This document shows positions 9,101-29,799 of a stretch of DNA of 38,703 nt, in pieces (position 1 is the stretch's first letter; every line of letters starts with the position of its first letter). The notes beneath the pieces are model-generated. The model was not told the origin of the DNA and searched no databases. It saw only the letters and a list, made by a program, of their open reading frames with translations. The DNA is from Chlorokybus atmophyticus. Its lineage: Eukaryota; Plantae; Mesostigma and Chlorokybus algae. A program made the position numbers and the translations under genes. The stretch lies in assembly GCA_009103225.1 (NCBI GenBank), contig RHPI01001946.1, positions 278,420-317,122 of the forward strand. The letters are read 5' to 3'.

Positions 9101-9167
9101 GCAAAGGGGAGACCCGTCGTGGTTTCATCTTCTGAGGTGGCGTCCTGTTGCGAGCTGTGAAGGACAT
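120..9167 (-). CDS. Gene A: giant type II membrane Pro/Cys-rich cell-surface protein (>1860 aa, 3' partial)
   Basis: 21 exons join in frame with GT-AG introns and matching phases: 9167-9099, 8996-8938, 8580-8361, 8178-7884, 7619-7450, 7305-7160, 6949-6763, 6692-6619, 6469-6273, 6199-6099, 5884-5501, 5428-5324, 5255-5097, 4880-4650, 4460-4239, 4161-4097, 4004-3760, 3531-2434, 2371-1585, 1335-999, 736-299 (5589 nt = 1863 codons). A weaker candidate exon lies at 153-120, and no stop is reached. No signal peptide; ~230-aa hydrophilic N-terminus, one hydrophobic segment (GALLASVCRLALIAMLCWNAY, ~7512-7577), then a Cys motif, WRRRRLLQ, Pro-rich repeats, SPPP extensin-like tracts and Cys-rich domains. 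Confidence 0.85.
1336..1584 (-). repeat. Intron of gene A filled with degenerate (CAA)n/(CAC)n triplet repeats
   Basis: GTAAGC donor at 1584 and CAG acceptor at 1336 rebuild codon AAG and join two Cys-rich exons (NNC-K-TQSV). Confidence 0.8.
2940..3250 (-). repeat. Coding tandem repeat (~50-54 nt unit) encoding six PPAG[AT]PG(GT) units in gene A
   Basis: Translation PGAQPGGPPPAGAPGGTQPGAQPGVPPAGAPGG...; repeated ccacctgg(a/c/t)g units on the + strand. Confidence 0.85.
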
Positions 9168-9557
9168 TCCAAGCACAACGACCACAGCTGTTGCTGAGAC
9201 TGCGGCTGTCTCCTCCGCCCGCTATGCATGCCTCTCAACTTGATGTCTTGCTTGTTTGCTTACTCACGGCCTTTCTCACCTCCCTGGCTTGCACTGAACA
9301 AATGGAAACAACACAGGAGCCTGTTACCAGTCAGGTAGTCGATATACTTGGTACACTTTATGTGATCATCTTGACAAGGGCGATGACAAGCACAGCAACA
9401 TGACCAGCAGCAAATACCCACGCACTTGCTTGTGATCTTTCTTCTCCTTCACACCAACCAGGAGGAAGAGCCGGCGGCAGAGCTGCTGGAGAGCCCAATG
9501 TTGGCTGAATGAATTTTCTCAAATCCTAAGTCCTGCCTGGGAACCGATAGCCGATAG

Positions 9558-9783
9558 AAACCCTAATTGACATCACGACCGCCAACGTCAAGCAGCAGGG
9601 CGCTGAGGAGGTGCACACCACACTGGACACACCAACCGTGGGCAACGTTTTGCTTCCGGAACAAAAACATGTCCTTCCGTCACGTGAGCAGCAACGAAAC
9701 GGAAGGACAGGGGCGTGGAATCTGGAAAGCTTCCTTCCATAGTGAAACCCTAGATCTCTAAACCCTGACTGGCCTAAACCCTG
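9558..9783. promoter_or_regulatory. Telo-box cluster in the divergent promoter between gene A and MIC60
   Basis: AAACCCTAA 9558-9566, AAACCCTAG 9745-9753, CTAAACCCTG at 9758 and 9774; these match the plant telo-box AAACCCTA. Confidence 0.65.
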
Positions 9784-9847
9784 GCAAGTCTAAGCCTTGT
9801 GGGCGGCGAAGGAGGAGGCGGCGGCGGTCGCCGTGGTGGCGGGGGCA

Positions 9848-12800
9848 ATGCGGCGGGCGGCGCCGCTTTTGGGGACTAGGCTGCGGGCCGCCCACGCAGC
9901 CGCCCGCCGCCGGGCTGGTTTGGCCTCTTCAACTGGGAGCAAAGGATCTCCTCCAACTCCGCCGAAGCAAAACGGTGCTCAAGTACATCAGCCACAGGTG
10001 CCATGCAGAGACCAATGCAATGCATGCTCTGTTATTATTGCAGCATGAGCACATCACGCCGATGGTCCCGTCATGCTGGGAAAAATGCCGGTTGTTAACT
10101 CCATCAATTTCAGCGGTGTAAGCTGTCGGTATTGTATGGGACACATGCAATAACGCTTTCCCAAGGCTGATGCCTTTATCTGTGTTTCATGTTTGTCGAC
10201 AATGCATGGTTATTGACAGACGGTGAAAACTTTTGCAGTTCGTAAGCAGCACCATTGCATTGTGCACAAGCAATGATTTGTGTAATGCTCTTTGCATGTA
10301 TGTCAGCCAAGTCGCCTGTCACTGCGGTCGCATTGGCATGACGTCCCTGACAGACAAACGCACTCATACGAGCCAATGAGTGTGCTGCATCGTGCGTATC
10401 TTCGCCAATGTAGGTGTAGGATAGATGCATCCATGCAGTGCAAGTGTTTGCAAGGCATCATTTTTCCAGCATTACCATTGCCGCCAAAATTTATAGCGTC
10501 CCCACAGTGAGTTTGCTTCACAGGCAAAGCCTAAGGCTTCGGGGCCTGCCGCTGCCCCGACAGCACCAAAACCATCGACATCTGCACCTTCTGCACCACC
10601 GGCAGCTGGACCCATCACGCCGCCACCCCCACCCCCACCTGCATCCTCAAGGCGGTGGTTGTGGACTTCCCTCACAGCAGCAGCAGGGTTGGCGCTTGGT
10701 GTTGGTGCTGTATATGTGGACCCTTCGCGTCTGCCACCTGCGTTGCAACCATGGCAGGAACAACTGCGGCAGCTGCCTGCGAACCTGAAGTCTACCATAG
10801 GCCAAAATGAGGCATCAGACAAGCAGCAACAGCAGCAGCGGCAGCGGCAGCGGCAGCAGCGGCAGGAGCAGCAGCAACAGCAGCGGCAAGAACAGCAGCA
10901 ACAGCAGCGGCAGGAGCAGCAGGAGCAGCAGCAGCAGCAGCATGGGTCGTACATGCGTGAACATCAGGAGCAACCACAGGAACAGCCTGTCACATTGCAG
11001 GACACCAATCTTTCAGGACATGAGGTTGAGCAACTGCAGGCTGCAGCAGTTGAGCAGTTCGCTGATGCGCAGCGTGAGCTGCGGTCGCATTCAGAGACCG
11101 CCAAACATCATGCTGAAGCTGCAGAAACGTTCATTGATGGCCACATCAAGTCACAAAAGTCAGCTGCAGCGGTGCGTTGCGTTCTGTCTTATGGCTTACA
11201 AAGCTGTCCAGTTGTGTCGCATCACGCACATATAGTTAACTAAAGGCAGGGTGGCAGTCGTGCAAGTGGCCAAAAGCTGCAACTCATGTCTGCTCCTAAT
11301 ATGTAGTATTGTGGCAGCTTGAAGTGGAGAGCACAAACACTGGCAACTCAAACTTCGTTAAACTGCAGTCGTCTCCGCACCGGATTGAAAGCATGGAGGA
11401 GGCGGGTACAGACAAGAAGGATACTCGGGAGTCGATGCGGGAAGCGGCGCAAAGCAGAGATGCTAGCCCTGCTGGATCAGGTGAGGTGTAGCAGTGGCAC
11501 GGATGGTTTGGTAACAGGCAACAATTGCCCGCCATGATCATGGTTGTGTCACTGCAGTATAACATTGGTATTTGGTACATGTCACACTCGTTTGTGAGAG
11601 TTTTTGGATCACAAGCATGCGCAATAATGCCGTTTGCATTGATTGGGAAACTACAGGTGTTGCGGAGGCTGCAGCGGCTGTAGCTGCTGCAGCGGCACAG
11701 TCAGCTGCGCAAGACGCCAGCCGTTTGCTTGCTGACATGCGAGCAGAAGCGGAGGCACGCGTGGGCCTTCCAACAACATCTGCGCAACCATCACTGAGCG
11801 AGCAGAGCACTGTAGCTGTGGATGCACTGCTGGAAAACGCTAAACAACAACAGCAAGCCGTGGAGCCCGCTAGTGTTGATGGGGCAGAGGGTGAACGTGC
11901 TGTGTCAGAGGACGTTGGCGCGGTTGAAGAGTGGCGCAGAGCGCAGGGCCTAGTGCTTGTTGAAGCCATCCGAGCCGCGGAGCAGCGGCAAGCACAAGCT
12001 GATGCTATCAAGTTTAATGAGGTTTTGAAGCAACGAGATGATGAGACAGCGCGTGCCCTGCAGGCCGCACATGATGAAGCAGCTCGTCGGGCTCAGCAGG
12101 TACAATCTTAATAAATGCTGTTGTTGTCACGTTGGCTGAGGGTTTTCGTGCGTGTCCACACAGGTCAAGCAGCTTCAGGAGAGGTTGGAGGTCGGCACGA
12201 AGGCAATGAGGTCGGCACTTGAGGAGCAGCGGCGCGCGGCGGAGTTGAGGCTGACACAGGCGCTTGCACACAAGGAACAGGACGCGCAGGCCAAGGTGGA
12301 GGCCGCTATTGCTGACGAGCGTGTCAAGACAGAGGAGGGCCTGCTACAGGAGCGCATGGGGCGCATGAAGGCCATTGATGATCTTCGGATGAAGGTCAGC
12401 CGGTTGTATTGGGATGCATGCCCTGAGGATGTTGAAGATGTACTACATGCAAGATATATGCAAGACATGCAAGATGTGCAAGATGCAAGATGTATGCAAG
12501 ATGTACTACATGCTACACAATGGCCATGTTGTTGTCCTTTGCATCGTTGCAAAGGCAGCACGCACCAAGACTGAGTTGTTAGCTACTAGAATGTTTACTA
12601 CGAACACTCTTATCACTGGCATGGTTTGAGGGTATGTGCCACTAACAATCTCACTTGCCTTTCCAGATCAATGCATTGCAACAAGCATTCAGCCGGAGAT
12701 CAGATGAGGCTCACCAGTCTCACAAGGCTCACATGATCACCATGGGCGCATCGGCCTTGAGCGCAGCGGCTGATGAAGGCCGGCCGTTCAAGGCTGAAGC

Positions 12801-13541
12801 CGAGTTGCTCCTTTCTGCCTCACACTCTGATGAGGAAGGCGACCCCTTTGTGTTGGCTATCCTCTCCTCTCTACCGCACGAACTGGCTGAACGGGGAGCA
12901 CCCACTCGCACGCAGCTGGCCGACCGATTTGCACAAGTGAAGCGTAATGCACGACAGGTTTGTTGCCATGCAATGTACAGCAGACAAATTGCACCATTTT
13001 AAGCATGTAGTGAGCCCCCAATGCAAGTAGTAAGCTTATGTGATTGCTAAGGCTGCATGACAGGTTGCCTTAGTACCAGAAAATGGCGGTGGTGTCCTGA
13101 CATATGGACTCGCACATGTAGCTTCCAAGCTGAAGTTGCCAGAGTATGGTGCCTATTTGCCTGAAGGTATGCCACCCATGCATGATATGCCACACACAAG
13201 TCGAGTCACGCTTGTTTCCCGCTAACTCCCCTTGTCCAGGAGGCGGTTCAGAGGCAGTTCTAGCGCGTGCGGAAGCTCATCTCACAGCTGGGAACCTTGC
13301 TGGTGCAGCTGATGAGTTGCAAAGCGGACTTGCGGGTAAGTGTAGGTCGTTGACATGTAATGTTTTCGATGCACATGTCATCAACTCATTAGGCTTGTAT
13401 GTGCTGTCTGCTGCGACAGGGTCAGCGGCATCAGCAGCTGCCAAGGATTGGGTTGCGGCAGCGCGGGAACGCGCACTTGTAGAGCAAAATCTGGCTGCTT
13501 TGAGAGCACATGCTGTCACTCTTGCCGCTGGCCTAACGTAG
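9848..13541 (+). CDS. MIC60: MICOS subunit MIC60 / mitofilin (~743 aa)
   Basis: Exons 9848-9982, 10524-11171, 11318-11480, 11657-12099, 12164-12394, 12667-12957, 13064-13166, 13240-13335, 13420-13541, all phases consistent. Arg/Ala presequence, one TM (WLWTSLTAAAGLALGVGAVYV), long coiled coil and a C-terminal mitofilin domain (ALSAAADEGRPFKAE...GAPTRTQLADRF...GGVLTYGLAHVASKLK...DWVAAARERALVEQ). Confidence 0.9.
10822..10940 (+). repeat. Coding CAG/CGG/GAG repeat giving a Q/R/E tract in MIC60
   Basis: Encodes QQQQQRQRQRQQRQEQQQQQRQEQQQQQRQEQQEQQQQQ. Confidence 0.9.
12437..12513. repeat. Intronic minisatellite (six TGCAAGA units) flanked by a GATGTACTACATGC direct repeat
   Basis: TGCAAGA at 12448, 12459, 12468, 12477, 12484, 12495; 14-nt direct repeat at 12437 and 12500, inside MIC60 intron 12395-12666. 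Confidence 0.8.
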
Positions 13542-14051: not shown

Positions 14052-17000
14052 TTAATGGTTAGATGCGAAGGTGGATGTAGGCAACGGCGGGCGCGTAAGC
14101 GTTGGCGCCTGAAGCTTGCGCTTGCGTGGCGTGCCGCCCTCATCATCAAACCCGAGCGGATGGCTCGCAAGAGGTCCCTTTGTCGGGGCGTACATCGCCT
14201 CCAACATGGGATCACTCTTGTAAGCGGGTGCCGGCACGTCCTTCACCTTGTTGGCACGACGCCGACGCCGGCAGCAGTACACACCCACAATGGCACCGAT
14301 GATGACAAGTACAAGTAGCAAAGCTCCACCCAAACCAGCCCCGAGGGCAATGCCCAACGCTGAGGACTTCTTGGCGGAAGGGGATGTGGCCCCACTACCA
14401 CCAGCGTTACTGCGTGTGGATGCGGGGAGACATGTGGCGCTACCCGAGTCGCGGTACCAACTTGTAGCACATTCAGAGCAGTCCGTGCCGGTATAACCAC
14501 TATAACAAGCACATGTGCCACTCGCGGCGTGACACACGCCGTGAGCGCTGCACTGCTGACCGTTGGTGTTGGACAGGGGGCACATCACGAGGGAGTACGG
14601 GCAGTCCAATGCACAACATGTGGACACGCCGTCCTCCCCGCACCTCTCACCCATCTCGCACAACCTGTTGCCGCACACGCCCTCCGCCGTCACGTTGGCC
14701 ACCGCGTCAATAGTTGTGTCGGTACCGGCGAGTTGTCCACCCGAAGCCGCAGAGAGAGCCGTGCTGATCTGGTTCAGACCCAACGCACCCGAAGAAGTGG
14801 AAGTACTCGCCTTGTTGGGATTGTATTTGAATGTGATTGTGCCTGTTGTGCCGCTTTGCAACAAACGTCGTCGCCTCCAACCAGCGCTCGTGTACTCGCC
14901 AGAATCAACCGTCTCAATTGTGCTCACGTCCGCACCCAACATGCTCGCCAACCCGTACTCTACCGTCCCATACTGCAGAAGAAAGGTTCCAACATCAGCA
15001 TCACTGATGACCAATCACATTGCAACATGTAGGCCTTCTCCAAACCATTGCACTACACTATGGTGTGTATGTGTGTATGTACAGTGCATCATAGTGCAGA
15101 GCGGCAGAGTCAAGTGTTGTATCGTAGAGTTACAAACATCATGTATGGTACATATGGGTTGTTACATGATGTTGTACACAGCCACCTTATGGTGTGATTG
15201 CGGCAATATGTATGTACCTGGCTTGAAGTGCTTGCGTTGGCGCCATCGTTCTGCACCGTGCTGATATGAAGCACGGCGACCGTGGCGCAGCTCGTCCCGT
15301 CCCCGTCGCACACGCCGCATGTGTCGATGTTGCCGCTCTTGCAGCAGAGGCCGCCGTAGTCGAGGACGTCGCAGCCGGCGCCGGCGGCATCAACGGAGGA
15401 GGAGAGGCCATCGCACACGCCCAACGCATCCAACACACCACTGGATGAGGAGACAACACACACATGAGCACCATTGCAAGCATGATTGAAGAGGGACAGC
15501 ATGACACACGCACGCACGCGCACGCGCACGCACACACTGTGCTTTGTCACCCGTCCTCTCACCTTTCACAGCACATTGCGTCCTTGTCTAAGACTGCCTC
15601 ACCGCCGCTGCAGCACATGCCAACCTTGTCGACGGCCGTCGTGCAGCACCTGGCAGAATACAATGAGAGGGTTGAGTAAAGCTTGCCACAGTATCATGCT
15701 ATGCAGCACTCCGTCCACGTGCATGCTTGAACGTGCATGTATGTGTGTATGTGTAACTCATACCTTCCAAGGATATCGATCGCGTGTCCTTCGCATCCAG
15801 GCGGCAGCTGGCAGTACTTTCCAGTGTACCCATCCCCGCACGCGCACTTTGCGTTGGCACACACGCCATGTCCCGAGCACCCCTCTCCATTACAAAAATC
15901 ACACGGGTCCGTGCCACACTCCATCACTTCAGGTAGTTTCAGCACCCCCTGGCAAGAACCTGACGAGGCTGCGTTGCTGCCATCAGAGGCCTGGCAGGTG
16001 ACCTGACGGGCAGCGAAGCCGCCCCCGCAGGTGCGTGAACAGGGACCCCAGGACCCAACATTCCAACCGTACGTCACGCAGGCACCCTGGTGACAACCAC
16101 GGGACTCCGCTGGCTTGGAGGAGGAGATACACATACCCACATCCACAACACTACTTGTTGTGCTGTCCACGCACTCTACGGTCCGTGTCTGCGTGCCTCC
16201 CCCGCACACTTTGGTACAGTTGCTCCACGCCGTTGTGCGCCAATAATGCTCGGGACACGTCTGCGTGCTACAACTTTTACTCGTCGGGTACGCGTCCAAG
16301 TCGTTGCACTTTGTCGTTGGGTCTGTCGGGTACGCTCCCGTGGTCGCATCAGCACACAAAACGGTGCGGTATTGCGTCCCCCCGTCGCAGGTGGCGTCGC
16401 ACTCGGTCCACGCGGAAGAGTACACGCCGTAGCGAGAACAAGGGATGGAGTTGCACTGTCTATATGCTACAGGAGCAGTTAGAGAAGCGCAGTCTGAGTC
16501 TGATGCAGTTCTTCCGTCGCTGTAGCCGCAAACTACTGTCCGGACCTGAGGGGACATGTGCACACGCATCAGTACCACATGGAGGTTTGTCAAGTGGTGG
16601 TGGTTGAAAGTGCGCGCGGCCATGTCTTGAATGAAGTTGTCAAGCAATAATGGTACGCACGCACGCATGCACACATGCTGCTATGGGTCAGCTTGTAAAG
16701 ACAAGTGTGTGTACAAGTGTGTACATGCGTGCGTGCGCGTGCGCGTGCCTGTGCGCGTGTGCGCGTGTGTGTAAGAGAGTGCGTGTTAGTATGTTTATGT
16801 CTGCCACTCATAGACAAATTGGTTGTCTCACCTGAACACCACTTCCGCACGGTTGCGAGCACGGCGTCCAATCCGACGCGAACCACGCCGCCTGTCCGTC
16901 ACTCAACGCCCTATTATCCCCACTACTCCCACTATCTCCACTCCACCTCTGCGGCGAGCTGCACTCATCGCTACAATGCTTGGGTCCATTCTTCACAAAC

Positions 17001-20000
17001 CCTCCATTATACATATCAAGCGCTAGTTTCGCCAGATACACGGCCGCCAAGTCGTTGAGTCTGAATGAACACTTGGGCAAAGCTTTGGTTGAACACCAAG
17101 TGAGTAATGTGTCTATTGGAGTCTTGTCGCAACCGTTGGCGACATTGATTGAAGAGGTCACGAAGGAACGGCCGAGAGAGTAGAAAGGGTCGCCGGAAGT
17201 GCTGCCGAGGATGTTTTTGTAGGAGACGCCGCAGACGGAAGAGGTGGAGGGGATGGATTTGGGCCAGGAGTTGGACTTGGTTTGCCACCAGTTCTGGAAA
17301 AGAGAAGAGGCGGTGAGGGATGCACACACGTACGGGCACGCATGCATGCATATGCAGTCACACACGCACACGCGCATGCGTGCGCATACACATGCGAGCG
17401 TGTGTCACAGAGACACATACACACACAGAGATACACACGCACGCACGCACGAACGCCAAGTGTAACTTGTTTCTTTGTTTGTTTCAAGACATTGCAATAC
17501 CTGAGTGTATGAGCAGGTGGTTGTTGTTGGAGACGGGGTTGGCGTAGAGCTCACTGTGCAGGCTGTGGAACAAAGCCATCGCACATCAATTAATACTATC
17601 AACTCGCGACACACACAACACAAAGACCACAAAGTCCATCATCTCACACCTGGCAGCGCATCGTTGCCGAGGTTCCAATTCCCCAACAAATTCCCGATTG
17701 TGACGGCGTCATCGTTGTCATCGCTGTCATCATCATCATCTATGCCATCAAGATCACTGATACGACTTTTATACAAACACCTCTTCTCCAACATACTCTT
17801 GGCTTTGCGCGTAGACTTGATAAGATAATCGTGCGTGCACCCGTTGGCAATGTTGAGACTGGCAGAGATGTAATGTTGGGCCAAAAAGGTCCAGGGACTT
17901 TTTCCAGGATCGGATGTGGTGTTCCCGAGGACCTCCACCCAACTCTTCCCGCAAAGGGACTGAGGACCCTTCACGGGCCAGCCTCGGGACCTCCAGTAAG
18001 AGGGGTTCCAGACACAGTCTCCGCAGCAAGTAGGACTTGGGCTGGGAGCAGGACTATTTCCAACATCACCACCGCCAACATTATCATCATCGTGTTCAAA
18101 GTTGCACACATCGTCGATATCATCGTCATCGCCAGTCGTATCATCATCGTTACAGCGTGACACGCCTTTCTTCCCGCGGTTGAAATCACTCAGGGCCGAT
18201 ATGACGTGTAATGCTTGCACCGTGTTGTTGTTCATGAGTTGCTTGTTGCATGACGAGCACGCCCACTTTGCCCATATGATGTTGTCCGCGACATCATCCG
18301 TATCAGCTCCATTATTCACATTCAGCGTGGCGCACGCCAACTCTTTCCCGAGCGATATCGACACATCCGAGGCTTGCGCCGAGGTCCCGAACCAGGTCTG
18401 GTAAGAAGTCCCGCAAAGGGACCAAGAGGAGGATGAACCCTTCCAGGACTTGGGATTCTTCCCCCACCAGGACTTCTTACGCACGCAACCGGAAGGTGTT
18501 TGTGTGCCTTTGCAACCGGTAATGCCACACACGCCGGAGACTGAGACGGTGCCACGCACGGTGGAAGGAGAGGTTTGGTCCAACTCGATGGTGGCGACGC
18601 CGGTCGTGTACTTGCCGGGCAACTCAAGACTGTACTCGACAGTCATCTGTGCAGGCATATAGAGTGAGATTGTGCGTGTGTGGGTGTGGGTGTGGGTGTG
18701 GGTGTGCGCGTGCATGCGCAGGCAAGCGTCTATGTTGGTGTGTGCATGCATGCGTGCGCGTGTGTAAGTGTATTTGTTAGTGCGTGCAAGCACCAACATG
18801 CATGCATGCATATAGGTGGGCACGCACATACATGAGTATGCAAGAATGTCAGATTGCCAAAATGTGACTACAATATTTGTAGTGCAGGTTTGAGTGTGTA
18901 TTGAAACCTGTGTTGAGTCGCTGAAGCCAAAGTCCCACAGAAACATCCTTTTCCCATTCACCGTCACGATCTCCGCGGTTCTTCCCGTCCCTTGCGGTCC
19001 CCACGCAATAGTATCAATCGTTCCCGCCACGCACGTTGGCAACTGCACTCTGAACCCCGACACTTGTGACGAAGACCCACTCAACCTCTTCAACGTCCAC
19101 GTGAAGCGTGTGACGTTGGACTTGACATCGTAGCGAGAGCACTTCTTGTTGAAGGTGACCCAGAGACCGTTGGCTTTGGGAGCGTCCCATTGGGGACTGC
19201 ATGTTGTGTCGGAGGGGGGGGAGGAGGNGTTAACATCTGGACGGCCATCGTTGCCTGAGGGTTGTGCCGGTCTGTGTTTTTGGACATGAATGGTGAGGCC
19301 GGTGGATTGGTAGCAGAAATGGCTGATGTAATCACGGAAACGGCTTGGGTATCTGGAGGGGGGAGGGGGGGGAGGAGGGGGAGGGGGAACATCATCGGCG
19401 CACTGGGGAGGGCCACGCTTGCCCCCGCACCAATCATCGAGGTCCTGCAGGTGCATCGCACTGTCACTTTCACTCTCACTCTCACTCTCTTACACGCATA
19501 CGCACACGCACACGCACACGCACACGCATACCAATGGGCGTACACGCGCACGCGCACGCACGCACACACGCATACCTTGATGGCATTCTTGATCTTTGCC
19601 CTGTCATCGTCATCAGCATCATAGCCATTCTTGTTGCTGTAACCGCTATAACTCTTGCTGTTGACTTTGCACTTCTTCAGAGCCACTTGCGCTACAGCAA
19701 AAGCCTTTGCCACAGCTTTGTTGTCACAACCAGTATTCTTATTCAGATACGCCGATACATAACTCCTCTGCAGATGTGCAATAAGTTTGTTGTCGTCATC
19801 ATCATCATTGGTGTTGTCGTAGTCGTTGTCATCGTTGGCAGCATCCGACCACTTCTTGCCACAACATTTCCAGTCTTTTCCCCCACTCGGCCACTTGTTG
19901 GTGTACTTGCGCCAGTAATTGCGCGAGCGCACGCACGGCGTGGTGGATGTTGTTGGTGTTGGCGCAGGTGCAGGTGAGGGTGAGAGACCCTCGCCTGGAC

Positions 20001-23000
20001 ACAATTTGTTGTTGTTGTACGGCTTCACGGCATTGTTGAACGCCTCGAGGACGGCTGATACAGCAGTAGCTTGAGTTGTGTTCGTGCAGCCGCACGTGGC
20101 GAGTGTGGACTCGGCCCACGCGAGTGCATCAGCTACGGGTGATGTGTTCACGCCGTTGAGACCGTTTAACACGGCGCTGATATACTGCCTCGCAAGATTG
20201 ATAACCACAGGGTTCTTTGTCTTCGGCGTCTTCTTCATGATGTACCACCACGACTTGCCGCATAACCTCTTACCACCATACTGCCCATTCGTTGGCCAGT
20301 TGAGACAATCCGCCCAATACCCGGGCGTGTGCACGCATATGTTGGGTGGAGGGGGTGGAGGTCCACTCGCCGGGGGCGGGTAACAAATTTCAGGTCCACA
20401 TATAGAAGGAGCAGATACAATATTCCCAGAAGGCTCCACAATCTGCATGGCAACAGGTCCCAACCTCAATGCAACAGGGACCTCCACGGTGTAGTTGACC
20501 ATCAATGTGGCGTCATCGGGGAACAAGAAGGCGAACTCGAGGAATTGTGTGCCAGCTACGTTGACGAGGTTCACACTGTTGCCGCCAGTGTTGGGGCCCC
20601 AGTTTAGGTCACCGGGACGGGTACCGAAACAGCAAGGGACCTCAATGCGGAAGGACCCACGCCCCACCTGATGTACATAGATACAAATCAGTAGTTACTT
20701 GGTGAACTAGTATAGAGACAATAGACACGAGTAATAGACAAAGACCAAGAAAAGTAACCAGCATTATTTGAAGTGGACTCTCAGACCTCTAAAGATGTAC
20801 CCATTGTCATTTCAATATTACCTGAGTTGGGAACAGTGGCTGTCGCTTGACGAGGTAGGATATGAGTGTCTTTCGCGTGGCTGTGTTGTAGCTCCTATCC
20901 ATATTCACCCAATATCCAGTGTTGCCATCATCGAAGTGCGGGTTGCAATCGGCGTCGGGTACAACTACTGGTGGTGCAGACACAGAGGCAATACCACATA
21001 TGCTCGGGGCCTGGATGATGTTGTTGTTTGGTTGCACTATCTGCATTGCCACGGGACCCGTGGCGAAATCGTTGGCAACCTCAACAAAATATTGCACCAT
21101 CATCTGCGTGTTGTTGTCGAAGCCGAAGGTGAACTCGAAGAAGTACACGCCGTTGATTGTTGTGATGGATGCGGCTTTGGTCTGACCCGCAGGTCCCCAG
21201 ATTAGGTCCGCATTGGTTAGGGCTGTTGGGACCTGAACCCGAAACTTTCCCACCTGAGCATTGGCAATCTGACCCTGCCTTTTCACCTGCCAGGTGAAGC
21301 GCGTGCGGCCGTTCAACGTGGGTGAAGGCGAGTACCAAAAGTCCACCCAGTAGCCCTGCACGCCCGCGTCGAATGTTGGGTTGCAGTCGTCTCCACACGG
21401 GGGCGGGTAGTACGTTGGTGGAGGTGGAGGAGGTGCAGGGAGTGTGTAACATTGCGCGGGTCCACATACTGTCACCAATACAACATTGCCATTTGCATCG
21501 ACCACGTGGGCCGTTACGGGAGCGAGCTGAACCCCGCCGGGGAGAGCCAACGTGTACGCGTTGCTGGAGAACTGCCATTCCAGATACAATACCCCGTTGA
21601 TTGTGACGATATCCGCGTCCACAACGCTGCCGTCACGCGGACCCCACGCCAACAAGTCCGCGTTGTTGCCGAAGCAACACGGGACCGCTATACGGAAGGC
21701 CGAGAAGGGTGATGCGCGTGAGACAGAGTATGTGAGGATTGTAGCGCTGTCTGTTGTATCCACCACACGTGTCATGTCCACGCGCACGTCGCTGGACACG
21801 CCGTTGCTCGAGCATGACAGATCTGCAGGTGGAAGCGATGTTGTTGCCGGCGCGGGTGATATTGACATCAGGCCGCAGATGGATGGAGCTGATATCGTCG
21901 CCACGTTGTTGGGTGGGTCGAGTTGCATCGCAACGGGACCCGTAACAAACCCGCCGCCAGCTTTAAGTTGAAGAGAGTATTGCACCATCATCTGTGTGTC
22001 GGAGTCAAAGCCAGCAGTCCACTCAAAGAACACCACATTGTTTATAGTGGTGATGCGGGCGGTTTTACCCGCACCACTTGGGCCCCACGCCAGCGTGTTG
22101 GGGTCCACGTTGGCGTAGTTGCTCGGCAAACCCACCCTAAACTTCAGCACTTGTGCGTTGGCCACCTGACCCTGGCGCTTGACTTGCCAGATGAAGATAG
22201 TGTTGCCGTTGGCGTCGGGCGCAGGAGCGTACCAAAAGTCCACCCAATAGCCTTTGTCCCCTGCGTCGAATGTTGGGTTGCAGTCACTACCGCAAGGAGG
22301 CGGGTAGCTTGGTGGCGGGGGAGGCGGGAGCGGGTAACACGCCACGGGTCCACATATTGACCCGACCCGGATGAGTTGAGCCCCCAGAGGACTAATGATC
22401 TGAGCTTGAACAGGTGCAATCTGGATCCCCGTTGGCACGCTAAGCGTGTACGTCACCATCGCCACATCAGAAGTAGCGAACCCGAAGCTCCACTCAAAGT
22501 AACGCACACCACTTTCAGTGACGAGCCGAGCGGTGTTCCCGCTGTCACGTGGACCCCACTCGACCAGGTCCGTGCGGGACCCGAGACAACACGGCAACGC
22601 TACTCTGAAAGCGGCACCCGCCCCAACTTGTGCGTCCACCATAGGCTGTCTCTTCACTGTGTAGGAGAGGAGAGTGCGGCCTAAGTTGATGTCAACTGAC
22701 TTCGACATCGAGAGCCAGTAACCGCCGCCTTGATCGGTTGTATAGTCAAAGTTGGGGTTGCACTGCTGATCTGCACACACACAACGGAAGCAAGTCAGTG
22801 ACAGCTTTCATCACTATCAACGAGCAAGCAATCGTTGTATCCTACTCTCATCATATCACTTTTATCCCCCTCAACACGTAAACAAATGCGTGACACACGC
22901 ACGCATGCAGATGCACGAACACACAGGCTTGCATGCACGCACACATGTATGCACAGGGTGGGCAAGAATGCTATGCTAATTGATATCAGCCGCAGCAGCG

Positions 23001-25046
23001 CCAGCAAGTGAGTGGGCAATCACACAAGTATACACAACATTTACCAGCGGGTGCTTGTGGTGGGAGGCCGATGGCTGTGATTCCACAGATGCTTGGCACG
23101 GGAACAGTGTTGGCTGTGTTCGAGCCCTGCAACGGGATGTTGATGCTTGCAGCTACGGGTCCAATGCTGAACGCGCCGGGAAGAGTGAGCGTGTACGTCA
23201 CCATAATCTGCGTGTTGGTGTCAAAGGCAAAGTTCCACACAAAGAAGGTCTTGCCATCTATCTTTGATATCTGCGCGGTGTGGCCGGTGCCAGTGGGTCC
23301 CCACTGTATGGCACTGATATCGGTGTCCCAGACCACGTTGTTATCGGGTAGCTGGACTTGAAATCCTGTCGAGGGTGCGTTGGATATTGCCCCCTGGCGC
23401 TTGAGGTTGTACACAAAGGTGGTCGTGCCGCGGATATCAGGGTAGTAGCTGAAATCCAGCCAGAAGCCCTGTGTTCCCGCATCAAAGTTGGCATTGCATC
23501 CGTCGCACGGGTCCGTCGATATCACCGGGGCACCTGTCCCACAACCAGCGATGCCGCAGAGACCTGAGGCCCTAACGACAGCACCGGTAGCTGCACCCAA
23601 ATCGACCTCGGCCGCGACGGGACCCGTGTAGAACACTTGTAAAGGAGCCACATAAGGCCCAACATCGGCCGCGACAGGGAGCTGCAGGGAGTAGACTACA
23701 GTCAGAGTGTTGACGTCGGTGTAATCGGAGTCCCACTGGAAGAAGCGCACGCCGTTGAGTTGGGTTATCTGTGCGGGTCCAGGCGGGGAGTACGCTATAG
23801 CTGATACGGGACCAGCGATGCAGTCGGGCAAAGGGACACGGAAAGCCGATATCGCCTGCGCACCTGAGGACCGAGTCACCGTCCACGAGAACAATGCCGC
23901 TGTCCCGCCAGCAGCCGAACCCCGCGTGAAGGACACCTTCATCCCCGTACCGACGTCCGTGTACGCTGCAGTGCAACCCGCATCTGACACAGACAATCAA
24001 CTCAACTTCATCAGCCCCATGCAAGTTATTGATGTAGCGATCGAGTTTGAAAATATGGTTGCAAGGTTTCAACTGAATGCTAGATGTTGAGGACTGCCTC
24101 AATAATTGCTCCATCCTGTATTGAGTATGCAATTGACTCAGAAAGCGACTAAGGCGAATGTATCAACCTTCCAAAGACCTACTGATGGACTCAACCAGCT
24201 TCTGAACAAATAAAGGGACCATACGAATGATCAACCGATCCATTACTTTAGGCACTGACATGATGAGTACTGGAGTTCAGAAAGTGGTATCAACACGTGC
24301 ATGATCGATCAACAGTGTACCTTGCAGCAGTGCTCTTCCTCCTACGTGCACTCCCCTCCCCTCGTCTTCTCTCACCACAGGTATCTCCTCCGGCACGTCG
24401 ACGGGGAACTCCGCGTCGAAGGTGGTGTAGACCGCGTCGATGGGGATGCCGGCCAGCAGCTGCGGGGGGCCCTGCAGAGGGACGGAGGAGGCGAGGGAGG
24501 TGAAGAGGGCGAGGAAGAGGAGGAAGGAGGACGAGAGCCAGGAAGAAACACCTGTGGATGTAAAGGCGAGGGACTTGTGTGAGTGTGGGTGGGTGAGTGC
24601 ATATATGCGATGGGTGTGCGTTGCAACAACCACTGTGGCGGCTGGTTTCAACTTGACACGCAGTGTGTGTGAGCGCGTTGTGAGGTTGAGTGTGTGTGGT
24701 CGTGATGTATAGATACACGCAGCCGAAGGCCATTGCATGGACTTGCGTGTGTGCGTGCGTGCATACACACATGCACACGCGTGCACATACACATACGAGC
24801 TTGCCGGGTATTGATGCAATGTGCACAGGTGTATCGCAGCAGCAAAACAATGGTGAACAACCACATCGAACGCTGCAGGGCGTTGTCGAACAGCAATCAG
24901 ACAACATATGACGTGTGCTCGCAGGTTTGGTGCTCTGATCTGCGTTACAGATCAGCGATGAGCGATCTAAGCGGGGGATGGTGATTGATTGTGCACTTAC
25001 TCTGAGATCTGGGCCGCCTTGAGGGGCGGCCCCTGGAGGTAGCCAT
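14052..25046 (-). CDS. Gene C: giant modular type I membrane adhesion/receptor-like protein with TSP1 and EGF domains (~2775 aa)
   Basis: 13 exons, all phases consistent: 25046-25001, 24551-24321, 23983-23045, 22770-20822, 20667-19576, 19444-18908, 18646-17650, 17562-17501, 17293-16832, 16545-15764, 15649-15563, 15440-15218, 14972-14052 (8328 nt). Signal peptide MATSRGRPSRRPRSQSVSSWLSSSFLLFLALFTSLASS; 4 ADAMTS-type TSP1 repeats (W..W..CS..CG.G.Q.R.V.C); EGF repeats (CSGHGVC...C.C..GYTG..C); TM LGIALGAGLGGALLLVLVIIGAIVGVY followed by CCRRRRR; 72-aa tail. The count includes 43 codons from a suspect insert at 19228-19356. Confidence 0.88.
15890..16885 (-). other. Four thrombospondin type-1 repeats within gene C
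   Basis: WFASDWTPCSQPCGSGVQVRTVVC, YSSAWTECDATCDGGTQYRTVLC, WRTTAWSNCTKVCGGGTQTRTVEC, WNVGSWGPCSRTCGGGFAARQVTC. Confidence 0.9.
19229..19356 (+). repeat. 128-bp exact direct duplicate of 25290-25417, inserted between poly-G runs next to an N
   Basis: The sequence gttaacatctgg...gggtatctgg is identical at both positions; the only N in the window is at 19228. Confidence 0.9.
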
Positions 25047-25289
25047 TGAGGTGCGGCTACACCTCCGCCCACACCGCCACCGCCGCCGCCGCCGCCGCCG
25101 CTAAGGGGAGAGGAGGTTGTCCTCAGTAACAAATAAAAAACCGTCACGTGAGCCCTCGTCGGTTATTTATCATGCAATCCGGATCGTGCAGTTTCCTCGA
25201 AACAGGTTCAATCAGTGGAGGGTTGTGCGAACCGGGTCTGCAACTCGTTGACGTCGCAACGTGAACATCTCACGGTGACCAGCTGGCAG

Positions 25290-25417
25290 GTTAACATCTG
25301 GACGGCCATCGTTGCCTGAGGGTTGTGCCGGTCTGTGTTTTTGGACATGAATGGTGAGGCCGGTGGATTGGTAGCAGAAATGGCTGATGTAATCACGGAA
25401 ACGGCTTGGGTATCTGG
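25290..25417 (+). repeat. Second (intergenic) copy of the 128-bp duplicate
   Basis: Identical to 19229-19356; lies upstream of gene C in the divergent gene C/ZML interval. Confidence 0.9.
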
Positions 25418-25976
25418 TGCTGCACGACTTGTGCCTATCCTGCCTTGGCATGCGCTGCGCTGACCGGTCGCGTCGATCCAACGGCCACACAACTAACGCA
25501 TGTTCGATAGCTGCTCCACGTCGACAGGGCAAGAACCAGTCCAAACGCACTCGCTAACCGGCGATATTGAACCCCTACAGGTCATGGATGCATGATAGTG
25601 CCTGAGCAATTTCGCAATGTCCGACGCGTGTCGACTGTATTCAACGGTGAGCTGTTAGGGCACAACGTTAGCAGCCAAGTTGGCTTTGGTTCGTTCGTTG
25701 CAACGTGCTCCTTGGCGGCGAGGTGGTTGTGGGCATTGGCGGTCATGTGGGCCACGCCAGGGAGGGTTTGCCGGCCCGGGCGGCGCAGTCGAGCTTGTCT
25801 TTGCGAGCGTGCGGCTACTTCTGGACGGAGTGAACGAGCTTGCTGGAGACCTGTAAAGGAGTGCTGCACAAACAAGAAGGGTTGAGGCGCCGGCAGGCGG
25901 CGAGGGCGGTGGCGACGTGGGCGAGGGAGTCGGGGAGGTTCAGCAAGTAGTCAGCGCTGGCGTGTGCACGCAGCGC

Positions 25977-27770
25977 ATGGCGGAACTCGGGGAGGAGTCC
26001 GGGGTCGTGGACGGAGCTGCCGCAGCGGCTGCGGTCCGGGCGGCGGCAATAGCTGTGGGAGGCAGGCCGGCGGGGGACGGGGAGGAGGACCATGACGGCC
26101 GCCATATCGGCACGGCACAGCAGCTGCAGCTCTCTTACCAGGGAGACGTTTTTACTTTTGACACCGTCCCGGCTGAGAAGGTGCGTTTAGGACATGCCCG
26201 CAGGCAACATATTTTGCATTTATGCAAGGAACTTCTGCTTGATGACGTTGATACGACATTGGCTATCTTGACGAAAGCGTTAGGCACAGGGTTGCAATGA
26301 AGATGCGCTGCAGCATCATTATTTGGTGTTTCTGACAAGGCGCACCTACTCTAGTAATATGTAATGTTTGCTCGTATACACTCTCATTATGCTCTTGCAA
26401 GTTACGACAGCTTGAAAGCTTGCACAGCCGCTTAGCATGTAGTGACTGGCCTTATACACTCTCATTGTGCTGTCGATATTAACAATCGTGTAAAAGATTA
26501 ACAGCTTGCACATCAGCTTAGCCACATGCAAAAGTCCGAAATTAAGTTAAGCATCGCAGTCTTGCTTGCAATGGTACCAAACGGCAGCACAACCTTTCAT
26601 GGCAGCCGTACATTGCTGTCGTGAGACATAAAAGGGTTTGCTGGAATGGGTGCATTTGCTGTCACGCACTTTGGGTTCACTGGTGGTTTTTTATTTTTTT
26701 TCATTGCTTTGCTTCTGCACTGTGCTGTGTATTAGCATCCGCGGATTTACCCAATCATATGATCAGGTCCAAGCCGTGTTGTTGCTGCTTGGCAGCAGAG
26801 AAAATGCACCGCCGCCACCAATGCACACAAACATGTTAACCGCAACCGCTCCCACGCACAAGGTCCAGAAGGTAATCCAGCCGACATGGTTGTGTTTTAC
26901 ACTATGGAGCTGAAGTTTTCACATAGGTCTGTCTCACTATTAATGTTGCAACCGACCAGCAGGAGCTCCCGCGCATGAGCGTTCCCCATCGGCTAGCATC
27001 ACTGGAGAGGTTCAAAATCAAGAGGAAAGAGAGGTCTTTTGAGAAGAAGGTGCGGTATGACGTGCGAAAGGAGGTTGCACAAAGGTGAGGTTGACACCAT
27101 ACAACATGCATAATTTGGCGAAGCAGACACTGTCACTTCAGCTTTTAATCTTGTTTAGGAGTAATGTGTTTGATTGCTCATACACATATGCCGTGCAGGA
27201 TGCATCGCAACAAAGGCCAGTTTGCCTCATCTAAGGACAAGGATGCAGCAATGGCCAACCAGTACGGGCAGCCAACCACAAGCGGCGAGTCACAAACATT
27301 GATGTGAGCATTGTTTTGTCTGGGCAGCTGTAACTTTGGATCTGTATGGGTCTCATGTGCGTTGTGGGTGGCTTATAGATGCACACACTGCGGCGTTGCT
27401 GAAGGCACAACACCTATGATGAGGAGAGGGCCCAATGGTCCTAAATCGTTGTGTAATGCGTGCGGGCTTTATTGGGCAAACAAGGTATGTTGGGCATTAT
27501 TGAAGTGTGAGCACACACTGCAGTGGGTTGCACTGCTGATGGTTGCAATGCCCACAGGGCATGTTGCGGGATCTATCAAAGCATGGTTCATCCGGAAATC
27601 TGCTTCAGCAAGGACTTGAAGATCCCAGCCAGCACATGGAAGGGCTATCAGACCCAAACCAGGTATGAGTTATATGGTTCAGCTCTCGCACATAACTCTC
27701 ATGGCGCTGGATACTGATTCTTCACGCACGACCTTTGCAGTTGCAAGTAGCAATTGTGTCCTCCGAATAA
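25977..27770 (+). CDS. ZML: ZIM-like GATA transcription factor (TIFY + CCT + C-X2-C-X20-C-X2-C GATA finger), ~258 aa
   Basis: Exons 25977-26180, 26767-26871, 26963-27084, 27199-27303, 27379-27484, 27558-27662, 27741-27770 (last exon uncertain). [33 protein letters not shown]; [43 protein letters not shown]; finger [30 protein letters not shown]. Confidence 0.92.
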
Positions 27771-29799
27771 CGCTTGCAAGGATGGCAGCCCCGAGTTAAT
27801 TCGTCGCACAAGGGGCGGGGTGCCTTCTCTTTTTAAGTTGCATGTCTGTACAAGTATTGGAAGTGCGCTCCGTGCCAGGCTTGGCATGTTGGTAAGAGTG
27901 TTGCAGTGCGTAGACTGTGCGTAGGATAGGGTTATTAGCACTATTTACACAGGAGGATGGTATGTGCGGCCAATGCAAGACTGTTGGCAGTGATGCAGCA
28001 GTGCTACCCTCCGCGATCTCCATGCTAGGTTCATTGCGTCCATTGATGCTGCAATGAAGAATATATTAAGGTGACAAACCTGGTTTCATCAACCAAAGTG
28101 CATATGCAATGGTGAAGAGCATTGCACCAAAAGTGAAATATAATGCGCATATGCATGGCCCGCACGCAGAATCAGTCATCCCGCAAGCAATATCCATAGG
28201 GACCCACAATTCCTAGGCTTACAGACATTGGGGTCTACAAGCTACCTCACTCTTTCTACCACTACCACTACAACCCATCCCTAATGGTCGTGCATGCACG
28301 CATCTCAAGTGTTGGTATCATTACATTCCACAGTTGCAATTGTATATTATGGCACCATGCCCTTACATGGGTGGGCAGTCATAGCAAGCCAATGATCCAT
28401 TTAATAGTGCATCTTTGCAACTATCAGCCATGCGTCTTCTTCTCTATATGATCAAAGTAGCATATTGCATACCAGCATAAGAGTTGCTACGCATCCACAA
28501 GTAGCCCCTGATTATGAACCAAGGTGGGTGCCACCAACATGAGTAGATGCCACACTCATTGCAAGCTCCAACGCAAAGCACATGTTGAAAAGCGCATGCG
28601 ACCATATTGGGACAATGTTCTGAAGCACATGAGGTACGGCAATACTCTATTATTAACCATCTCGTTGGATGAAGGCGTTTTACACGATTAACTTCGGCAT
28701 GTGGTTAATGCTGAAAGCAATATCAGTACTTGAGACAAATTGTCATGGATTTGATCATAAATGCTTGTAGTCCTTATCAAGTTGAACTGAACGCAAGTTC
28801 GCCCACCACTATAATGTACACATGTGAAAGGTAATGATCGCAGCCTTAATCATTTCAAACTTTACGCAAGCTTACAACCATAATTAATAGTCACATCGTG
28901 CAACATATCGTCATCACTTAACAAAACACTTTACTTGTCACAATGGTAAACAGTACAGAGGATACAACTGAAAAACAAACACTTTTTGCAATTGTCGTCC
29001 ATCTATGATCCTATGCACTCAGTCATACGTTGAGGTGCTTCACTTGAGATACATTGCTCGTCATAAAAAGGGGTTGCAATTCGCAAACGAAATCCCCCAC
29101 CTGATTTCCCGTGGGGTCGTCCGCTGCTGCTCTGCCACAAGTCCCCTGCATGATGCGACGTGATGGCACAGAGCACACTGCGTTTTGTCCTGATCTGCCG
29201 CCATGCTCTTGCGCAAAGCAAAGTGTTTCACCGGAGCTCAGTCGAAGCATGCACGTGAGTCACATCCATCATGTGACTGAAAGGGATTTGGCAGGGGGGG
29301 TTTAGGTTGAAATTCTGTCATGGCGGGGAAAGGGAGGCGCTGCCAGCCCTGACTGGTGAGAGGGACGCTCTGTAGAAGCATGCCTCTCTGTCAAGCTCAA
29401 GGCTAAGTCACGGACAGGCTGAAGCTTAGGCTTAGACCTACCAAGGCGGGGAGAGCATTGCATTGCCTTGTACTAAACGTCCCTTGCCGCACTGCAAAGT
29501 CGCAAACATCGTCAACGCTGCTCCATGTAATCACTGCCAGCAGGCTCTGCGTCTGCGTGCTGGCTTGCACTATGTTGAGGGGCGCCCTTGTGCATGCATG
29601 GCCGTGTTTCGTGTTTGCACAGTCATTTGCGCACAAGTGCACCATAACGCAATGATAGGATGCGGCAGCCTTGCAACTGTAGCCGGCATGATTTTCTTTG
29701 TAGTGGTCAACGTCGAGACTGCTGATTGCGAGCTGCTTGCTGCTGCTGCTCCTCGTTCTGTCAATTCACAATGAGCATTCAATCTGAGCATTGGCGCAG

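What the first reader, a model, noticed from the sequence alone, without database searches (positions are those of the whole stretch)
14052..25046. Gene C: ~2775-aa adhesion-receptor-like mosaic unlike land-plant surface proteins
Seen order: signal peptide, pro-region ending RALLQ, 7 beta-rich repeats with poly-Pro hinges, 2 TPGYW domains, an 8th beta repeat, 3 more TPGYW domains, 4 TSP1, EGF, CC-rich and CGVCDGDG repeats, SEA-like module with WRRRRLLQ, CGNRLCEMGERC, EGF, TM, CC-polybasic juxtamembrane (possible palmitoylation) and a 72-aa tail with two Tyr and a Pro-rich end. Inference: an animal-like adhesion, mating or mechanosensing receptor with a cleavable ectodomain, probably undescribed in this architecture.
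Basis: partly seen in the sequence, partly recalled or inferred. Interest (0 to 1): 0.75.

Follow-up and report, generated by a model that had tools for sequence, protein, structure and literature searches.

The report
Giant mosaic surface protein of Chlorokybus
An early-branching green alga related to land plants has an intact gene for a very large cell-surface protein that strings two unnamed building blocks onto animal-type adhesion modules, most likely tying the cell membrane to its slime coat.

Summary
I rebuilt the gene on the minus strand. It has 13 exons and 12 GT..AG introns, and the exon lengths add up to 8328 nt, which is 2775 codons plus a stop.

Pfam confirms four TSP1 repeats and one EGF above its cut-off, with a second EGF just below it. 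The eight beta-rich repeats and five 'TPGYW' modules are real repeat families with no Pfam, NCBIfam or PDB sequence match. The 'SEA-like' label and the cleavage sites remain inference.

A profile of the beta repeat, searched against 1.84 billion representative proteins, gave only 14 hits. The best six are Chlorokybus atmophyticus proteins. Three of these are 350-aa proteins built as domain, poly-proline, domain, which is the layout of volvocine pherophorins, but none matches Pfam's pherophorin model. No protein in that collection has more than two full copies of the domain, and the gene's own product is absent.

Best reading: a membrane-anchored, proline-rich matrix or adhesion glycoprotein, possibly cut by a Golgi subtilase at RALL/RRRRLL. 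No expression data or orthologue with this architecture was found. The same stretch was noted twice by this scan (s1-179467, s1-179508), and TSP1 genes were noted elsewhere in this genome. I rate it a new variant of a known kind, of moderate interest.

The parts
14052..25046 (-). Whole gene C: 13 exons, 12 GT..AG introns, 2775 codons plus stop
   Evidence: Hand-built model. Elevated GC3 in exons versus intron GC, and stops in the introns.
24322..25046 (-). E1 plus E2 (intron 24552-25000): Met, a basic n-region, the hydrophobic signal-like segment SSFLLFLALFTSLASS, and a roughly 50-aa acidic stretch ending RALLQ (24322-24336)
   Evidence: Hydropathy above 1.6 only here and at the TM. The E1-E2 splice is the least certain junction.
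23532..23981 (-). Beta repeat R1
   Evidence: Alignment A1; hmmsearch iE 3.4e-46.
23076..23516 (-). Beta repeat R2 (B type)
   Evidence: Forms a clade with R4 and R6, support 98/98.
22331..22768 (-). Beta repeat R3 (A type), followed by a PPPPPP hinge
21863..22300 (-). Beta repeat R4 (B type); this is the copy that was folded
   Evidence: AF2 with A1: pLDDT 87, pTM 0.84, ten-strand beta sandwich. Only generic Ig-like or sandwich matches in PDB.
21443..21823 (-). Beta repeat R5 (A type), followed by a PPPPPP hinge
20987..21403 (-). Beta repeat R6 (B type)
20380..20959 (-). Beta repeat R7 (A type), split by intron 4 (20668-20821) and followed by a PPPPPP hinge
   Evidence: The C-terminal part is in A1. 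The N-terminal part, not in the profile, is found at iE 2.7e-9.
19993..20346 (-). TPGYW module T1
   Evidence: Alignment A2. AF2 pLDDT 68: a three-helix core after a poorly modelled N-terminal part. No PDB match.
19576..19941 (-). TPGYW module T2, with an acidic Asp/Asn insert. It is followed in E6 by DLDDWCGG... and a P10 hinge.
18509..19207 (-). Beta repeat R8, split by intron 6 (18647-18907)
   Evidence: The N-terminal part is in A1. The C-terminal part, not in the profile, is found at iE 3.9e-6.
18137..18499 (-). TPGYW module T3
17747..18037 (-). TPGYW module T4
16964..17562 (-). TPGYW module T5. Its opening motif CSYTQ|NWWQ is split between E8 and E9 (intron 17294-17500).
15901..16885 (-). 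Four TSP1 repeats. The first is split by intron 9 (16546-16831).
   Evidence: Pfam TSP1_ADAMTS E 2.5e-32 with 4 stretches, plus a partial hit at the E9 end, E 5.6e-6. Human thrombospondin-1 TSR structures at E 2e-4. W..W/CS.TCG motifs and two Cxx[ST]CxxG sites.
15808..15900 (-). EGF-like module 1
   Evidence: EGF_Teneurin E 2.7e-4, 21.4 bits, below the 24.3 cut-off. Six-Cys pattern.
15284..15807 (-). Cys-rich short repeats (CC.SG..D ... CGVCDGDG) across E10 end, E11 and E12
   Evidence: Sequence only. No Pfam family.
14679..15283 (-). WRRRRLLQ lies at 14856-14879.
   Evidence: No SEA hit in Pfam or in PDB sequences. Fold not tested.
14442..14675 (-). CGNRLCEMGERC Cys-rich stretch and EGF-like module 2
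   Evidence: EGF_Teneurin 26.6 bits (cut-off 24.3) and EGF_2 22.9 bits (cut-off 22.1). Stramenopile mastigoneme EGFs at E 3e-5.
14277..14366 (-). Transmembrane segment
   Evidence: 19-mer Kyte-Doolittle mean up to 2.35; sequence.
14055..14276 (-). Cytoplasmic part: CC, RRRRR, then a 72-aa tail with two Tyr, PRKRKL and PPLP

Best explanation
Gene C is a real, intact 13-exon gene of a Chlorokybus-type streptophyte alga. It encodes a type I membrane glycoprotein of about 2775 aa whose job is most likely structural: to tie the plasma membrane to the cell's glycoprotein and polysaccharide sheath, or to neighbouring cells in the packet.

Shown:
- The outer 1900 residues are built from two lineage-restricted modules.
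- The first is a 135-150-aa beta sandwich, present in 8 copies of alternating A and B types. Poly-Pro rods follow the A-type copies.
- In effect these form three and a half 'dumbbells' in tandem. Chlorokybus also makes the same dumbbell as free 350-aa secreted proteins.
- The second module is a roughly 110-aa 'TPGYW' unit with conserved Cys and a predicted three-helix core, present in 5 copies on short Ser/Thr/Pro linkers.
- The inner 800 residues are four TSP1 repeats, an EGF, short Cys-rich repeats, a juxtamembrane module holding RRRRLL, a second EGF, one TM helix and a short tail.

Inferred:
- The Pro runs are hydroxylated and glycosylated and act as stiff spacers.
- The beta-sandwich heads bind like heads (the free dumbbells) or sheath polymers.
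- The TSP1 repeats bind acidic or sulfated glycans.
- A Golgi subtilase of the S1P/SBT6.1 or kexin type cuts after RALL (removing a short propeptide) and at RRRR-LL. The ectodomain is then either shed into the matrix or held non-covalently on the stub.
For: Gene integrity and single-transcript logic:
- All splice sites are canonical, and elevated GC3 in the exons versus lower intron GC supports the coding model.
- Five domains run across introns (R7, R8, T5, TSP1 no. 1 and the Cys-rich repeats).

Membrane topology: hydrophobic segments occur only at the N-terminus and at 14277-14366, followed by CC+R5.

Module identities:
- TSP1_ADAMTS E 2.5e-32; EGF 26.6 bits, above the cut-off.
- Thrombospondin-1 TSR structures at E 2e-4.
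- The beta domain folds confidently as a sandwich (pLDDT 87).

Family context:
- Of 1.84 billion representatives, only 14 match the beta profile. The top six are Chlorokybus atmophyticus proteins.
- P0001-P0003 have the layout signal peptide (absent in P0003), domain, poly-Pro, domain.
- Other members are joined to a plastocyanin-like domain (P0004), or to a Laminin_G_3 domain (E 7.4e-5, below Pfam's cut-off) with a TM segment (P0007). So it is an extracellular module.
- The dumbbell layout is what defines pherophorins, the matrix building blocks of Volvox (PMC9818292). Pherophorins are often cleaved to release globular domains (PMC6313938).

Processing and habitat:
- RRLL fits the SBT6.1/S1P preference R-(R/K)-X-L or R-(R/K)-L-X, and that protease predates the plant-animal split (PMC7162652).
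- Two free Chlorokybus dumbbells end in RKLLR and RLLRY just after their last domain.
- Chlorokybus cells live in packets inside an extensive sheath (PMC10762512).
Against: - There is no expression, localisation or binding data.
- No orthologue with this architecture was found, so conservation cannot be used.
- The beta fold matches only generic sandwiches (best Z 8.1, Foldseek E 6e-4). That shows no ligand.
- The TPGYW module is modelled only moderately (pLDDT 68) and has no match at all.
- R.LL motifs are expected about once by chance in a protein of this size (my estimate), and a third one (RTLLS) lies inside repeat R3.
- RALL lacks the basic P3 residue preferred by plant SBT6.1.
- The signal peptide rests on an unverified 46-nt first exon.
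Confidence: 0.55

Rival explanations
1. It is a signalling receptor rather than a structural link. In this reading it is a wall or matrix integrity or strain sensor, processed like Notch or the transmembrane mucins. A constitutive cut at RRRR-LL makes a two-chain receptor. Pulling on the ectodomain exposes the stub to intramembrane proteolysis. The 72-aa tail (PRKRKL looks like a nuclear localisation signal, PPLP like a WW/SH3 ligand) then carries the signal.
For: A basic site lies about 170 residues outside the TM, within an EGF ... module ... EGF-TM arrangement. The tail carries RKRK and PPLP. The long, stiff ectodomain is suited to transmit force.
Against: The tail has no recognisable domain. 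No SEA, GAIN or NRR family match was found. The nuclear-signal and ligand motifs are short and common. No intramembrane protease site can be read from the sequence.
Confidence: 0.2
2. It is a recognition or attachment protein of a particular life stage, for example zoospore settlement or scale attachment, or a cryptic mating agglutinin like the hydroxyproline-rich agglutinins of Chlamydomonas.
For: The ectodomain is long and proline-hinged with globular heads. Chlorokybus zoospores carry scales of unknown chemistry (PMC10762512). TSP1-bearing type I adhesins drive attachment in other protists (PMC4501334).
Against: To my knowledge (not checked here), sexual reproduction is not described for Chlorokybus. 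No stage-specific expression data were available. No similarity to agglutinins was detected in any search.
Confidence: 0.12
3. The 2775-aa model is an artefact. The locus holds two or more genes, or a decaying gene, read as one.
For: The gene's product is absent from a collection that does hold the Chlorokybus proteome. The E1-E2 junction and a possible extra intron in E6 are uncertain. There is one N in E6.
Against: There are 8.3 kb of open frame across 13 exons with 12 canonical introns. Domains are completed across introns 4, 6, 8, 9 and 10-11. GC3 is uniformly raised. Large repetitive genes are often missed by annotation pipelines (general knowledge).
Confidence: 0.08

Closest known systems
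Pherophorins (hydroxyproline-rich matrix glycoproteins of Volvox and Chlamydomonas; Pfam PF12499)
   Same: Both have the dumbbell layout of two globular domains of roughly 130-170 aa joined by a proline rod (PMC9818292). Here that layout appears as A-PolyPro-B units in gene C and as free 350-aa Chlorokybus proteins. Both are secreted, multi-gene and lineage-expanded. A protein language-model search placed PF12499 clusters second and third (0.88 and 0.87).
   Different: PF12499 was never matched by any of 15 family members, even at E 10. The profile search reached no chlorophyte pherophorin at E<=1e-3. The Atlas scores are under 0.9 with 160-166 shared features, which is within chance. Here the units are concatenated, membrane-anchored, and joined to TSP1/EGF.
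TSP1/EGF type I adhesins of protists (apicomplexan TRAP/MIC2 class; chromerid TSP1-EGF proteins)
   Same: Both are type I membrane proteins with tandem TSP1 repeats, EGF modules and a short tail (PMC4501334).
   Different: Gene C has no vWA/I domain and no acidic tail with a subterminal Trp. The TSP1 block is membrane-proximal and makes up under 10% of the protein. The host is a streptophyte alga.
Transmembrane mucins and other EGF-SEA-EGF-TM proteins of animals (MUC13, MUC17 class)
   Same: Both have a long, rod-like, probably heavily O-glycosylated ectodomain, a membrane-proximal EGF ... module ... EGF-TM order, and a candidate cleavage site in the module between the EGFs. The mucin features are from my own knowledge.
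   Different: No SEA match by sequence. The candidate site is a basic subtilase-type motif, not the autocatalytic G/SVVV. The fold was not tested.
Thrombospondin/ADAMTS-type TSP1 repeats of animals
   Same: The best Pfam model is TSP1_ADAMTS, which matches over its full length 1-55. The closest solved relatives are human thrombospondin-1 TSRs. Two repeats have the Cxx[ST]CxxG O-fucosylation-type motif.
   Different: Only the repeat is shared. There is no protease, spacer or other ADAMTS or thrombospondin module.

Membership tests
TSP1 repeat (Pfam PF19030/PF00090) | HMM match above the curated cut-off | tested here: met
   PF19030 at 111.3 bits against a cut-off of 23.8, 4 stretches; PF00090 at 29.5 bits against 21.6.
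TSP1 repeat (Pfam PF19030/PF00090) | Trp ladder plus CS.TCG.G motif and six Cys per repeat | tested here: met
   WFASDWTPCSQPCGSG, WTECDATCDGG, WRTTAWSNCTKVCGGG and WNVGSWGPCSRTCGGG.
EGF-like domain | HMM match above the cut-off and the six-Cys pattern | tested here: met
   E13 copy: EGF_Teneurin 26.6 bits against 24.3, and EGF_2 22.9 against 22.1. The E10 copy is below the cut-off (21.4 bits) but has six Cys.
Pherophorin (PF12499) | Match to the family HMM | tested here: not met
   No PF12499 hit at E<=10 for the 8 repeats or the 7 Chlorokybus and other relatives.
Pherophorin (PF12499) | Dumbbell layout: globular domain, Pro-rich rod, globular domain, secreted | tested here: met
   Seen in R3-P6-R4 and R5-P6-R6 of gene C, and in P0001-P0003. 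The definition comes from PMC9818292.
Pherophorin (PF12499) | Shared fold with a pherophorin domain | not testable with these tools
   No pherophorin turned up in the PDB searches, and no library of predicted cellular structures was on hand.
SEA domain | Sequence match to the SEA family or to a solved SEA domain | tested here: not met
   No SEA hit in Pfam at E<=0.1 and none among PDB sequences at E<=1.
SEA domain | Alpha/beta sandwich fold with a cleavage loop between strands 2 and 3 | not tested
   The module spans intron 12.
S1P/SBT6.1 substrate | Luminal R-(R/K)-X-L or R-(R/K)-L-X motif (PMC7162652) | tested here: inconclusive
   RRLL at 14856-14876 fits the motif. RALL at 24322-24336 fits only the looser animal form R-X-(L/V/I)-X. 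The motif is expected about once by chance in 2775 aa.
Type I membrane protein | N-terminal signal sequence, one TM helix, positive-inside flank | tested here: met
   Hydropathy peaks occur only in E2 and at E13 residues 203-232, followed by CCRRRRR. No dedicated signal-peptide predictor was available.

The most novel reading that the evidence does not exclude
The unnamed beta domain is the streptophyte counterpart of the volvocine pherophorin domain. That would mean dumbbell-type matrix building blocks predate the chlorophyte-streptophyte split. In Chlorokybus they would exist both as free units and, in gene C, as a membrane-tethered poly-dumbbell wired through TSP1/EGF modules to a subtilase-cleavable stalk and a tail with a nuclear-signal-like motif. 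This would be a direct matrix-to-membrane link with Notch- or mucin-like shedding logic in the plant lineage.
Probability: 0.2. Interest if true: 0.7.

Novelty: new variant of a known kind. Interest (0 to 1): 0.5.

Why it matters
Land plants lack TSP1-type adhesion modules (my own knowledge), and Chlorokybus sits at the base of the streptophytes. A gene that joins proline-rod matrix units to TSP1/EGF modules and a membrane anchor shows what kind of cell-to-matrix link existed, or could exist, in that lineage. A review describes the Chlorokybus sheath only as containing arabinogalactan protein, so this gives a concrete protein to test.

The work also defines two unnamed extracellular domain families. 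The beta-sandwich family has at least seven genes in Chlorokybus and rare bacterial and other relatives. The TPGYW family has no detectable relatives.

Finally, a 2775-aa gene appears to be missing from the public proteome of this alga.

Tried and rejected
Searches that gave nothing:
- Word-index protein searches with E4, with the TPGYW alignment and with E13 all gave nothing. Two of them were capped at 8000 candidates, probably swamped by poly-Pro and poly-Arg words. They are therefore weak negatives, and they only see proteins of 0.55-1.75 times the query length.
- NCBIfam gave only noise: MamD on the Gly/Ala-rich TM region, and myxo_SS_tail.
- PDB sequence searches of E4 and E5 gave nothing.
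- Fold searches for both unknown domains returned only generic sandwiches or three-helix bundles.
- A metagenome scan with E4 found nothing.
- Rfam found no RNA family in the window.
- Pfam found nothing for the ten largest ORFs outside the gene.

Ideas tested and dropped:
- The pherophorin idea was tested three times with Pfam and not met.
- The C-terminal part of bacterial P0012 looked to my eye like a TPGYW module. hhalign (7 columns, E 0.74) and hmmsearch found nothing, so I dropped it.
- A genome-contig scan gave one spurious 20-residue match in a Geomesophilobacter lipoprotein.

Steps not done:
All searches were exon by exon, by reference. Modules spanning introns (R7, R8, T5, TSP1 no. 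1 and the juxtamembrane module) were analysed as pieces.

Full report
**Observation**

The region is eukaryotic, with 52-58% GC per kb, and the coding strand is the minus strand. I read every junction by hand and obtained 13 exons joined by 12 GT..AG introns of 87-449 nt. The exon lengths add up to 8328 nt, which is 2775 codons plus a stop.

The length is a sum of exon lengths, and all searches and folds were done exon by exon, by reference.

The coding model has three lines of support:
- GC3 is 0.61-0.84 in all exons of at least 28 codons (0.55 in the 20-codon E8), against 0.35-0.59 GC in the introns.
- Nine of the 12 introns carry stops in all three frames.
- Domains run across introns.

The domains that cross introns are these:
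- Repeat R7 crosses intron 4 and R8 crosses intron 6. The two pieces that I had left out of the repeat profile are found by it independently, at iE 2.7e-9 and 3.9e-6.
- The opening motif of the fifth TPGYW module is split CSYTQ|NWWQ by intron 8.
- The first TSP1 repeat is split by intron 9.
- The Cys-rich repeats cross introns 10 and 11.

The weak points of the model are the 46-nt first exon, one N at 19228, and a possible extra in-frame 99-nt intron at 19335-19237.

**What the modules are**

Pfam confirms four TSP1 repeats (TSP1_ADAMTS, E 2.5e-32, full model length) and one EGF above its cut-off. A second EGF falls just below the cut-off but has the six-Cys pattern. The closest solved sequences are human thrombospondin-1 TSRs for the TSP1 block (E 2e-4) and stramenopile mastigoneme EGFs for the EGF.

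Hydropathy gives just two hydrophobic segments, one in E2 (signal-like) and one at 14277-14366 (TM). The TM is followed by CC, RRRRR and a 72-aa tail with two Tyr, PRKRKL and PPLP. This is a type I topology.

**The beta repeat**

Eight copies align at 42% mean column identity. They share a signature of an N-terminal Cys, F.V.LP, WGP.G, ING..FF.W.FGF and a C-terminal ICG.

A tree separates a B type (R2, R4, R6; support 98/98) from an A type (R3, R5, R7; 87/89), with R1 and R8 apart. Poly-Pro runs follow the A copies R3, R5 and R7. The unit of duplication is therefore A, Pro rod, B.

AlphaFold with the eight copies gives a confident ten-strand sandwich (pLDDT 87, pTM 0.84). The PDB holds only generic matches: Foldseek best E 6e-4 to an uncharacterised Ig-like protein, and VIA best Z 8.1 to mu-homology domains, pilins and macroglobulin domains. 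Those scores are at the tool's background level. There is no Pfam, NCBIfam or PDB sequence match.

A full HMMER scan of 1.84 billion representatives found 14 proteins at E<=1e-3, of which nine carry the whole domain. The top six are Chlorokybus atmophyticus proteins from the JGI Chlat1 set. That also supports the scan's earlier placement of this genome in Chlorokybus.

- P0001 and P0002 are 350-aa proteins built as signal peptide, domain, poly-Pro, domain. P0003 has the same two domains and rod, but no signal peptide is evident in the model as given.
- P0004 joins the domain to a plastocyanin-like domain.
- P0007 is a Ser/Thr-rich type I membrane protein of unstated origin, with two copies and a sub-threshold Laminin_G_3 match (E 7.4e-5).
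- P0012 looks bacterial and adds an SdrD_B domain.

So this is an extracellular module, expanded in Chlorokybus and rare elsewhere. Gene C's own product, which would have scored far above everything else, is not in the collection. No listed protein has more than two full copies.

**The pherophorin question**

The layout of domain, Pro rod, domain is the defining layout of volvocine pherophorins (PMC9818292). A language-model search also placed PF12499-bearing clusters second and third, at 0.88 and 0.87.

However, those scores are under 0.9, with 160-166 shared features. PF12499 was never hit by any of 15 family members. The profile search reached no chlorophyte pherophorin. I therefore say it 'works like' a pherophorin and do not claim it 'is a' pherophorin. 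Homology stays open, at about 0.3.

**The TPGYW module**

Five copies share 8 invariant columns (W, W, CG, L, N, G, C). The model is only moderate (pLDDT 68). It shows a three-helix core after a poorly modelled N-terminal part; the four conserved Cys may staple that part (my inference). Nothing matches it in the PDB, in Pfam or NCBIfam, in the word-index search or among the beta-domain relatives.

Bacterial 110-138-aa hypothetical proteins came up at 0.86-0.87 in the Atlas. That is a lead only.

**How it most likely works**

Shown: a very long ectodomain of globular heads on proline and Ser/Thr/Pro spacers, a TSP1/EGF/Cys-rich stalk, one TM helix and a short tail without any enzyme domain.

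Inferred: the Pro runs are hydroxylated and glycosylated as in other green-algal HRGPs. The heads bind like heads (the free dumbbells) or sheath polymers. The TSP1 repeats bind acidic glycans. This makes a membrane-to-matrix tether, fitting an alga whose cells sit in packets inside an extensive sheath (PMC10762512).

Two basic-Leu motifs sit at telling places:
- RALL|Q lies right before the first domain.
- RRRRLL|Q lies about 170 residues outside the membrane.

RRLL fits the SBT6.1/S1P preference, and that protease is older than the plant-animal split (PMC7162652). RRRR also fits kexin/furin-type enzymes. Two free dumbbell proteins end in RKLLR and RLLRY, and pherophorins are commonly cleaved (PMC6313938). 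Still, such motifs are expected about once by chance here. I put cleavage at about 0.35.

**Rivals**

- A Notch- or mucin-like sensor that uses the tail: 0.2.
- A stage-specific attachment or recognition protein: 0.12.
- A model artefact: 0.08.

**Novelty and score**

Mosaic TSP1/EGF surface proteins are common in protists, for example in chromerids (PMC4501334), and proline-rod matrix proteins are typical of green algae. The kind is therefore known.

What is new:
- the combination of modules;
- the membrane-tethered tandem dumbbells;
- two unnamed domain families;
- the streptophyte host;
- the gene's absence from the public proteome.

No paper in the library links Chlorokybus with thrombospondin. 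Other first-stage notes report TSP1 repeats in three more genes of this genome (unchecked), so the stalk cassette may be a recurring anchor. I rate this a new variant of a known kind, with interest 0.5.

Noticed in passing
P0002 and P0003 (Chlorokybus proteins): Both free dumbbell proteins end just after their last beta domain in an R-x-L-L motif (…GNRKLLR and …PPRLLRY). This is the same motif type as RALLQ and RRLLQ in gene C, and it may be a lineage-wide processing or sorting signal.
   Followed up: partly
P0007 (UniParc UPI0006B2C941): An 884-aa Ser/Thr-rich type I membrane protein of unstated organism. It carries two copies of the beta domain, a sub-threshold Laminin_G_3 match, a TM segment and an RRRR flank. 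It is the only other membrane-anchored member of the family found.
   Followed up: partly
P0012 (Logan assembly): A bacterial-looking lipoprotein with one copy of the beta domain (iE 7.5e-12) followed by an SdrD_B domain. The family therefore has rare bacterial members.
   Followed up: partly
window 19237-19335 (-): A possible extra 99-nt in-frame GT..AG intron inside E6. It would remove an odd 33-aa stretch between the P10 hinge and repeat R8. One N at 19228 lies 9 bases beyond its acceptor.
   Followed up: partly
window 18678-18706, 19492-19528, 22896-22953 and other introns of gene C: The introns carry (GTGTGG)n, (ACACGC)n and similar runs. These read as long Cys/Val/Arg/His 'ORFs' in several frames and inflate mechanical ORF lists.
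   Followed up: yes
window 1-13000 and 25200-38703: The ten largest ORFs outside gene C have no Pfam family at E<=1e-3. First-stage notes describe a type II membrane protein with extensin-like stalks at 120-9167, and a fucoidanase-like gene cluster just before the window. The neighbourhood may therefore be rich in matrix genes.
   Followed up: partly
L001 3001-3060 (Geomesophilobacter sediminis): A 20-residue match (KKGWPVKGPQTLPGS) to TPGYW module T4 lies in an unrelated 389-aa lipoprotein. It is a chance hit, not a relative.
   Followed up: yes
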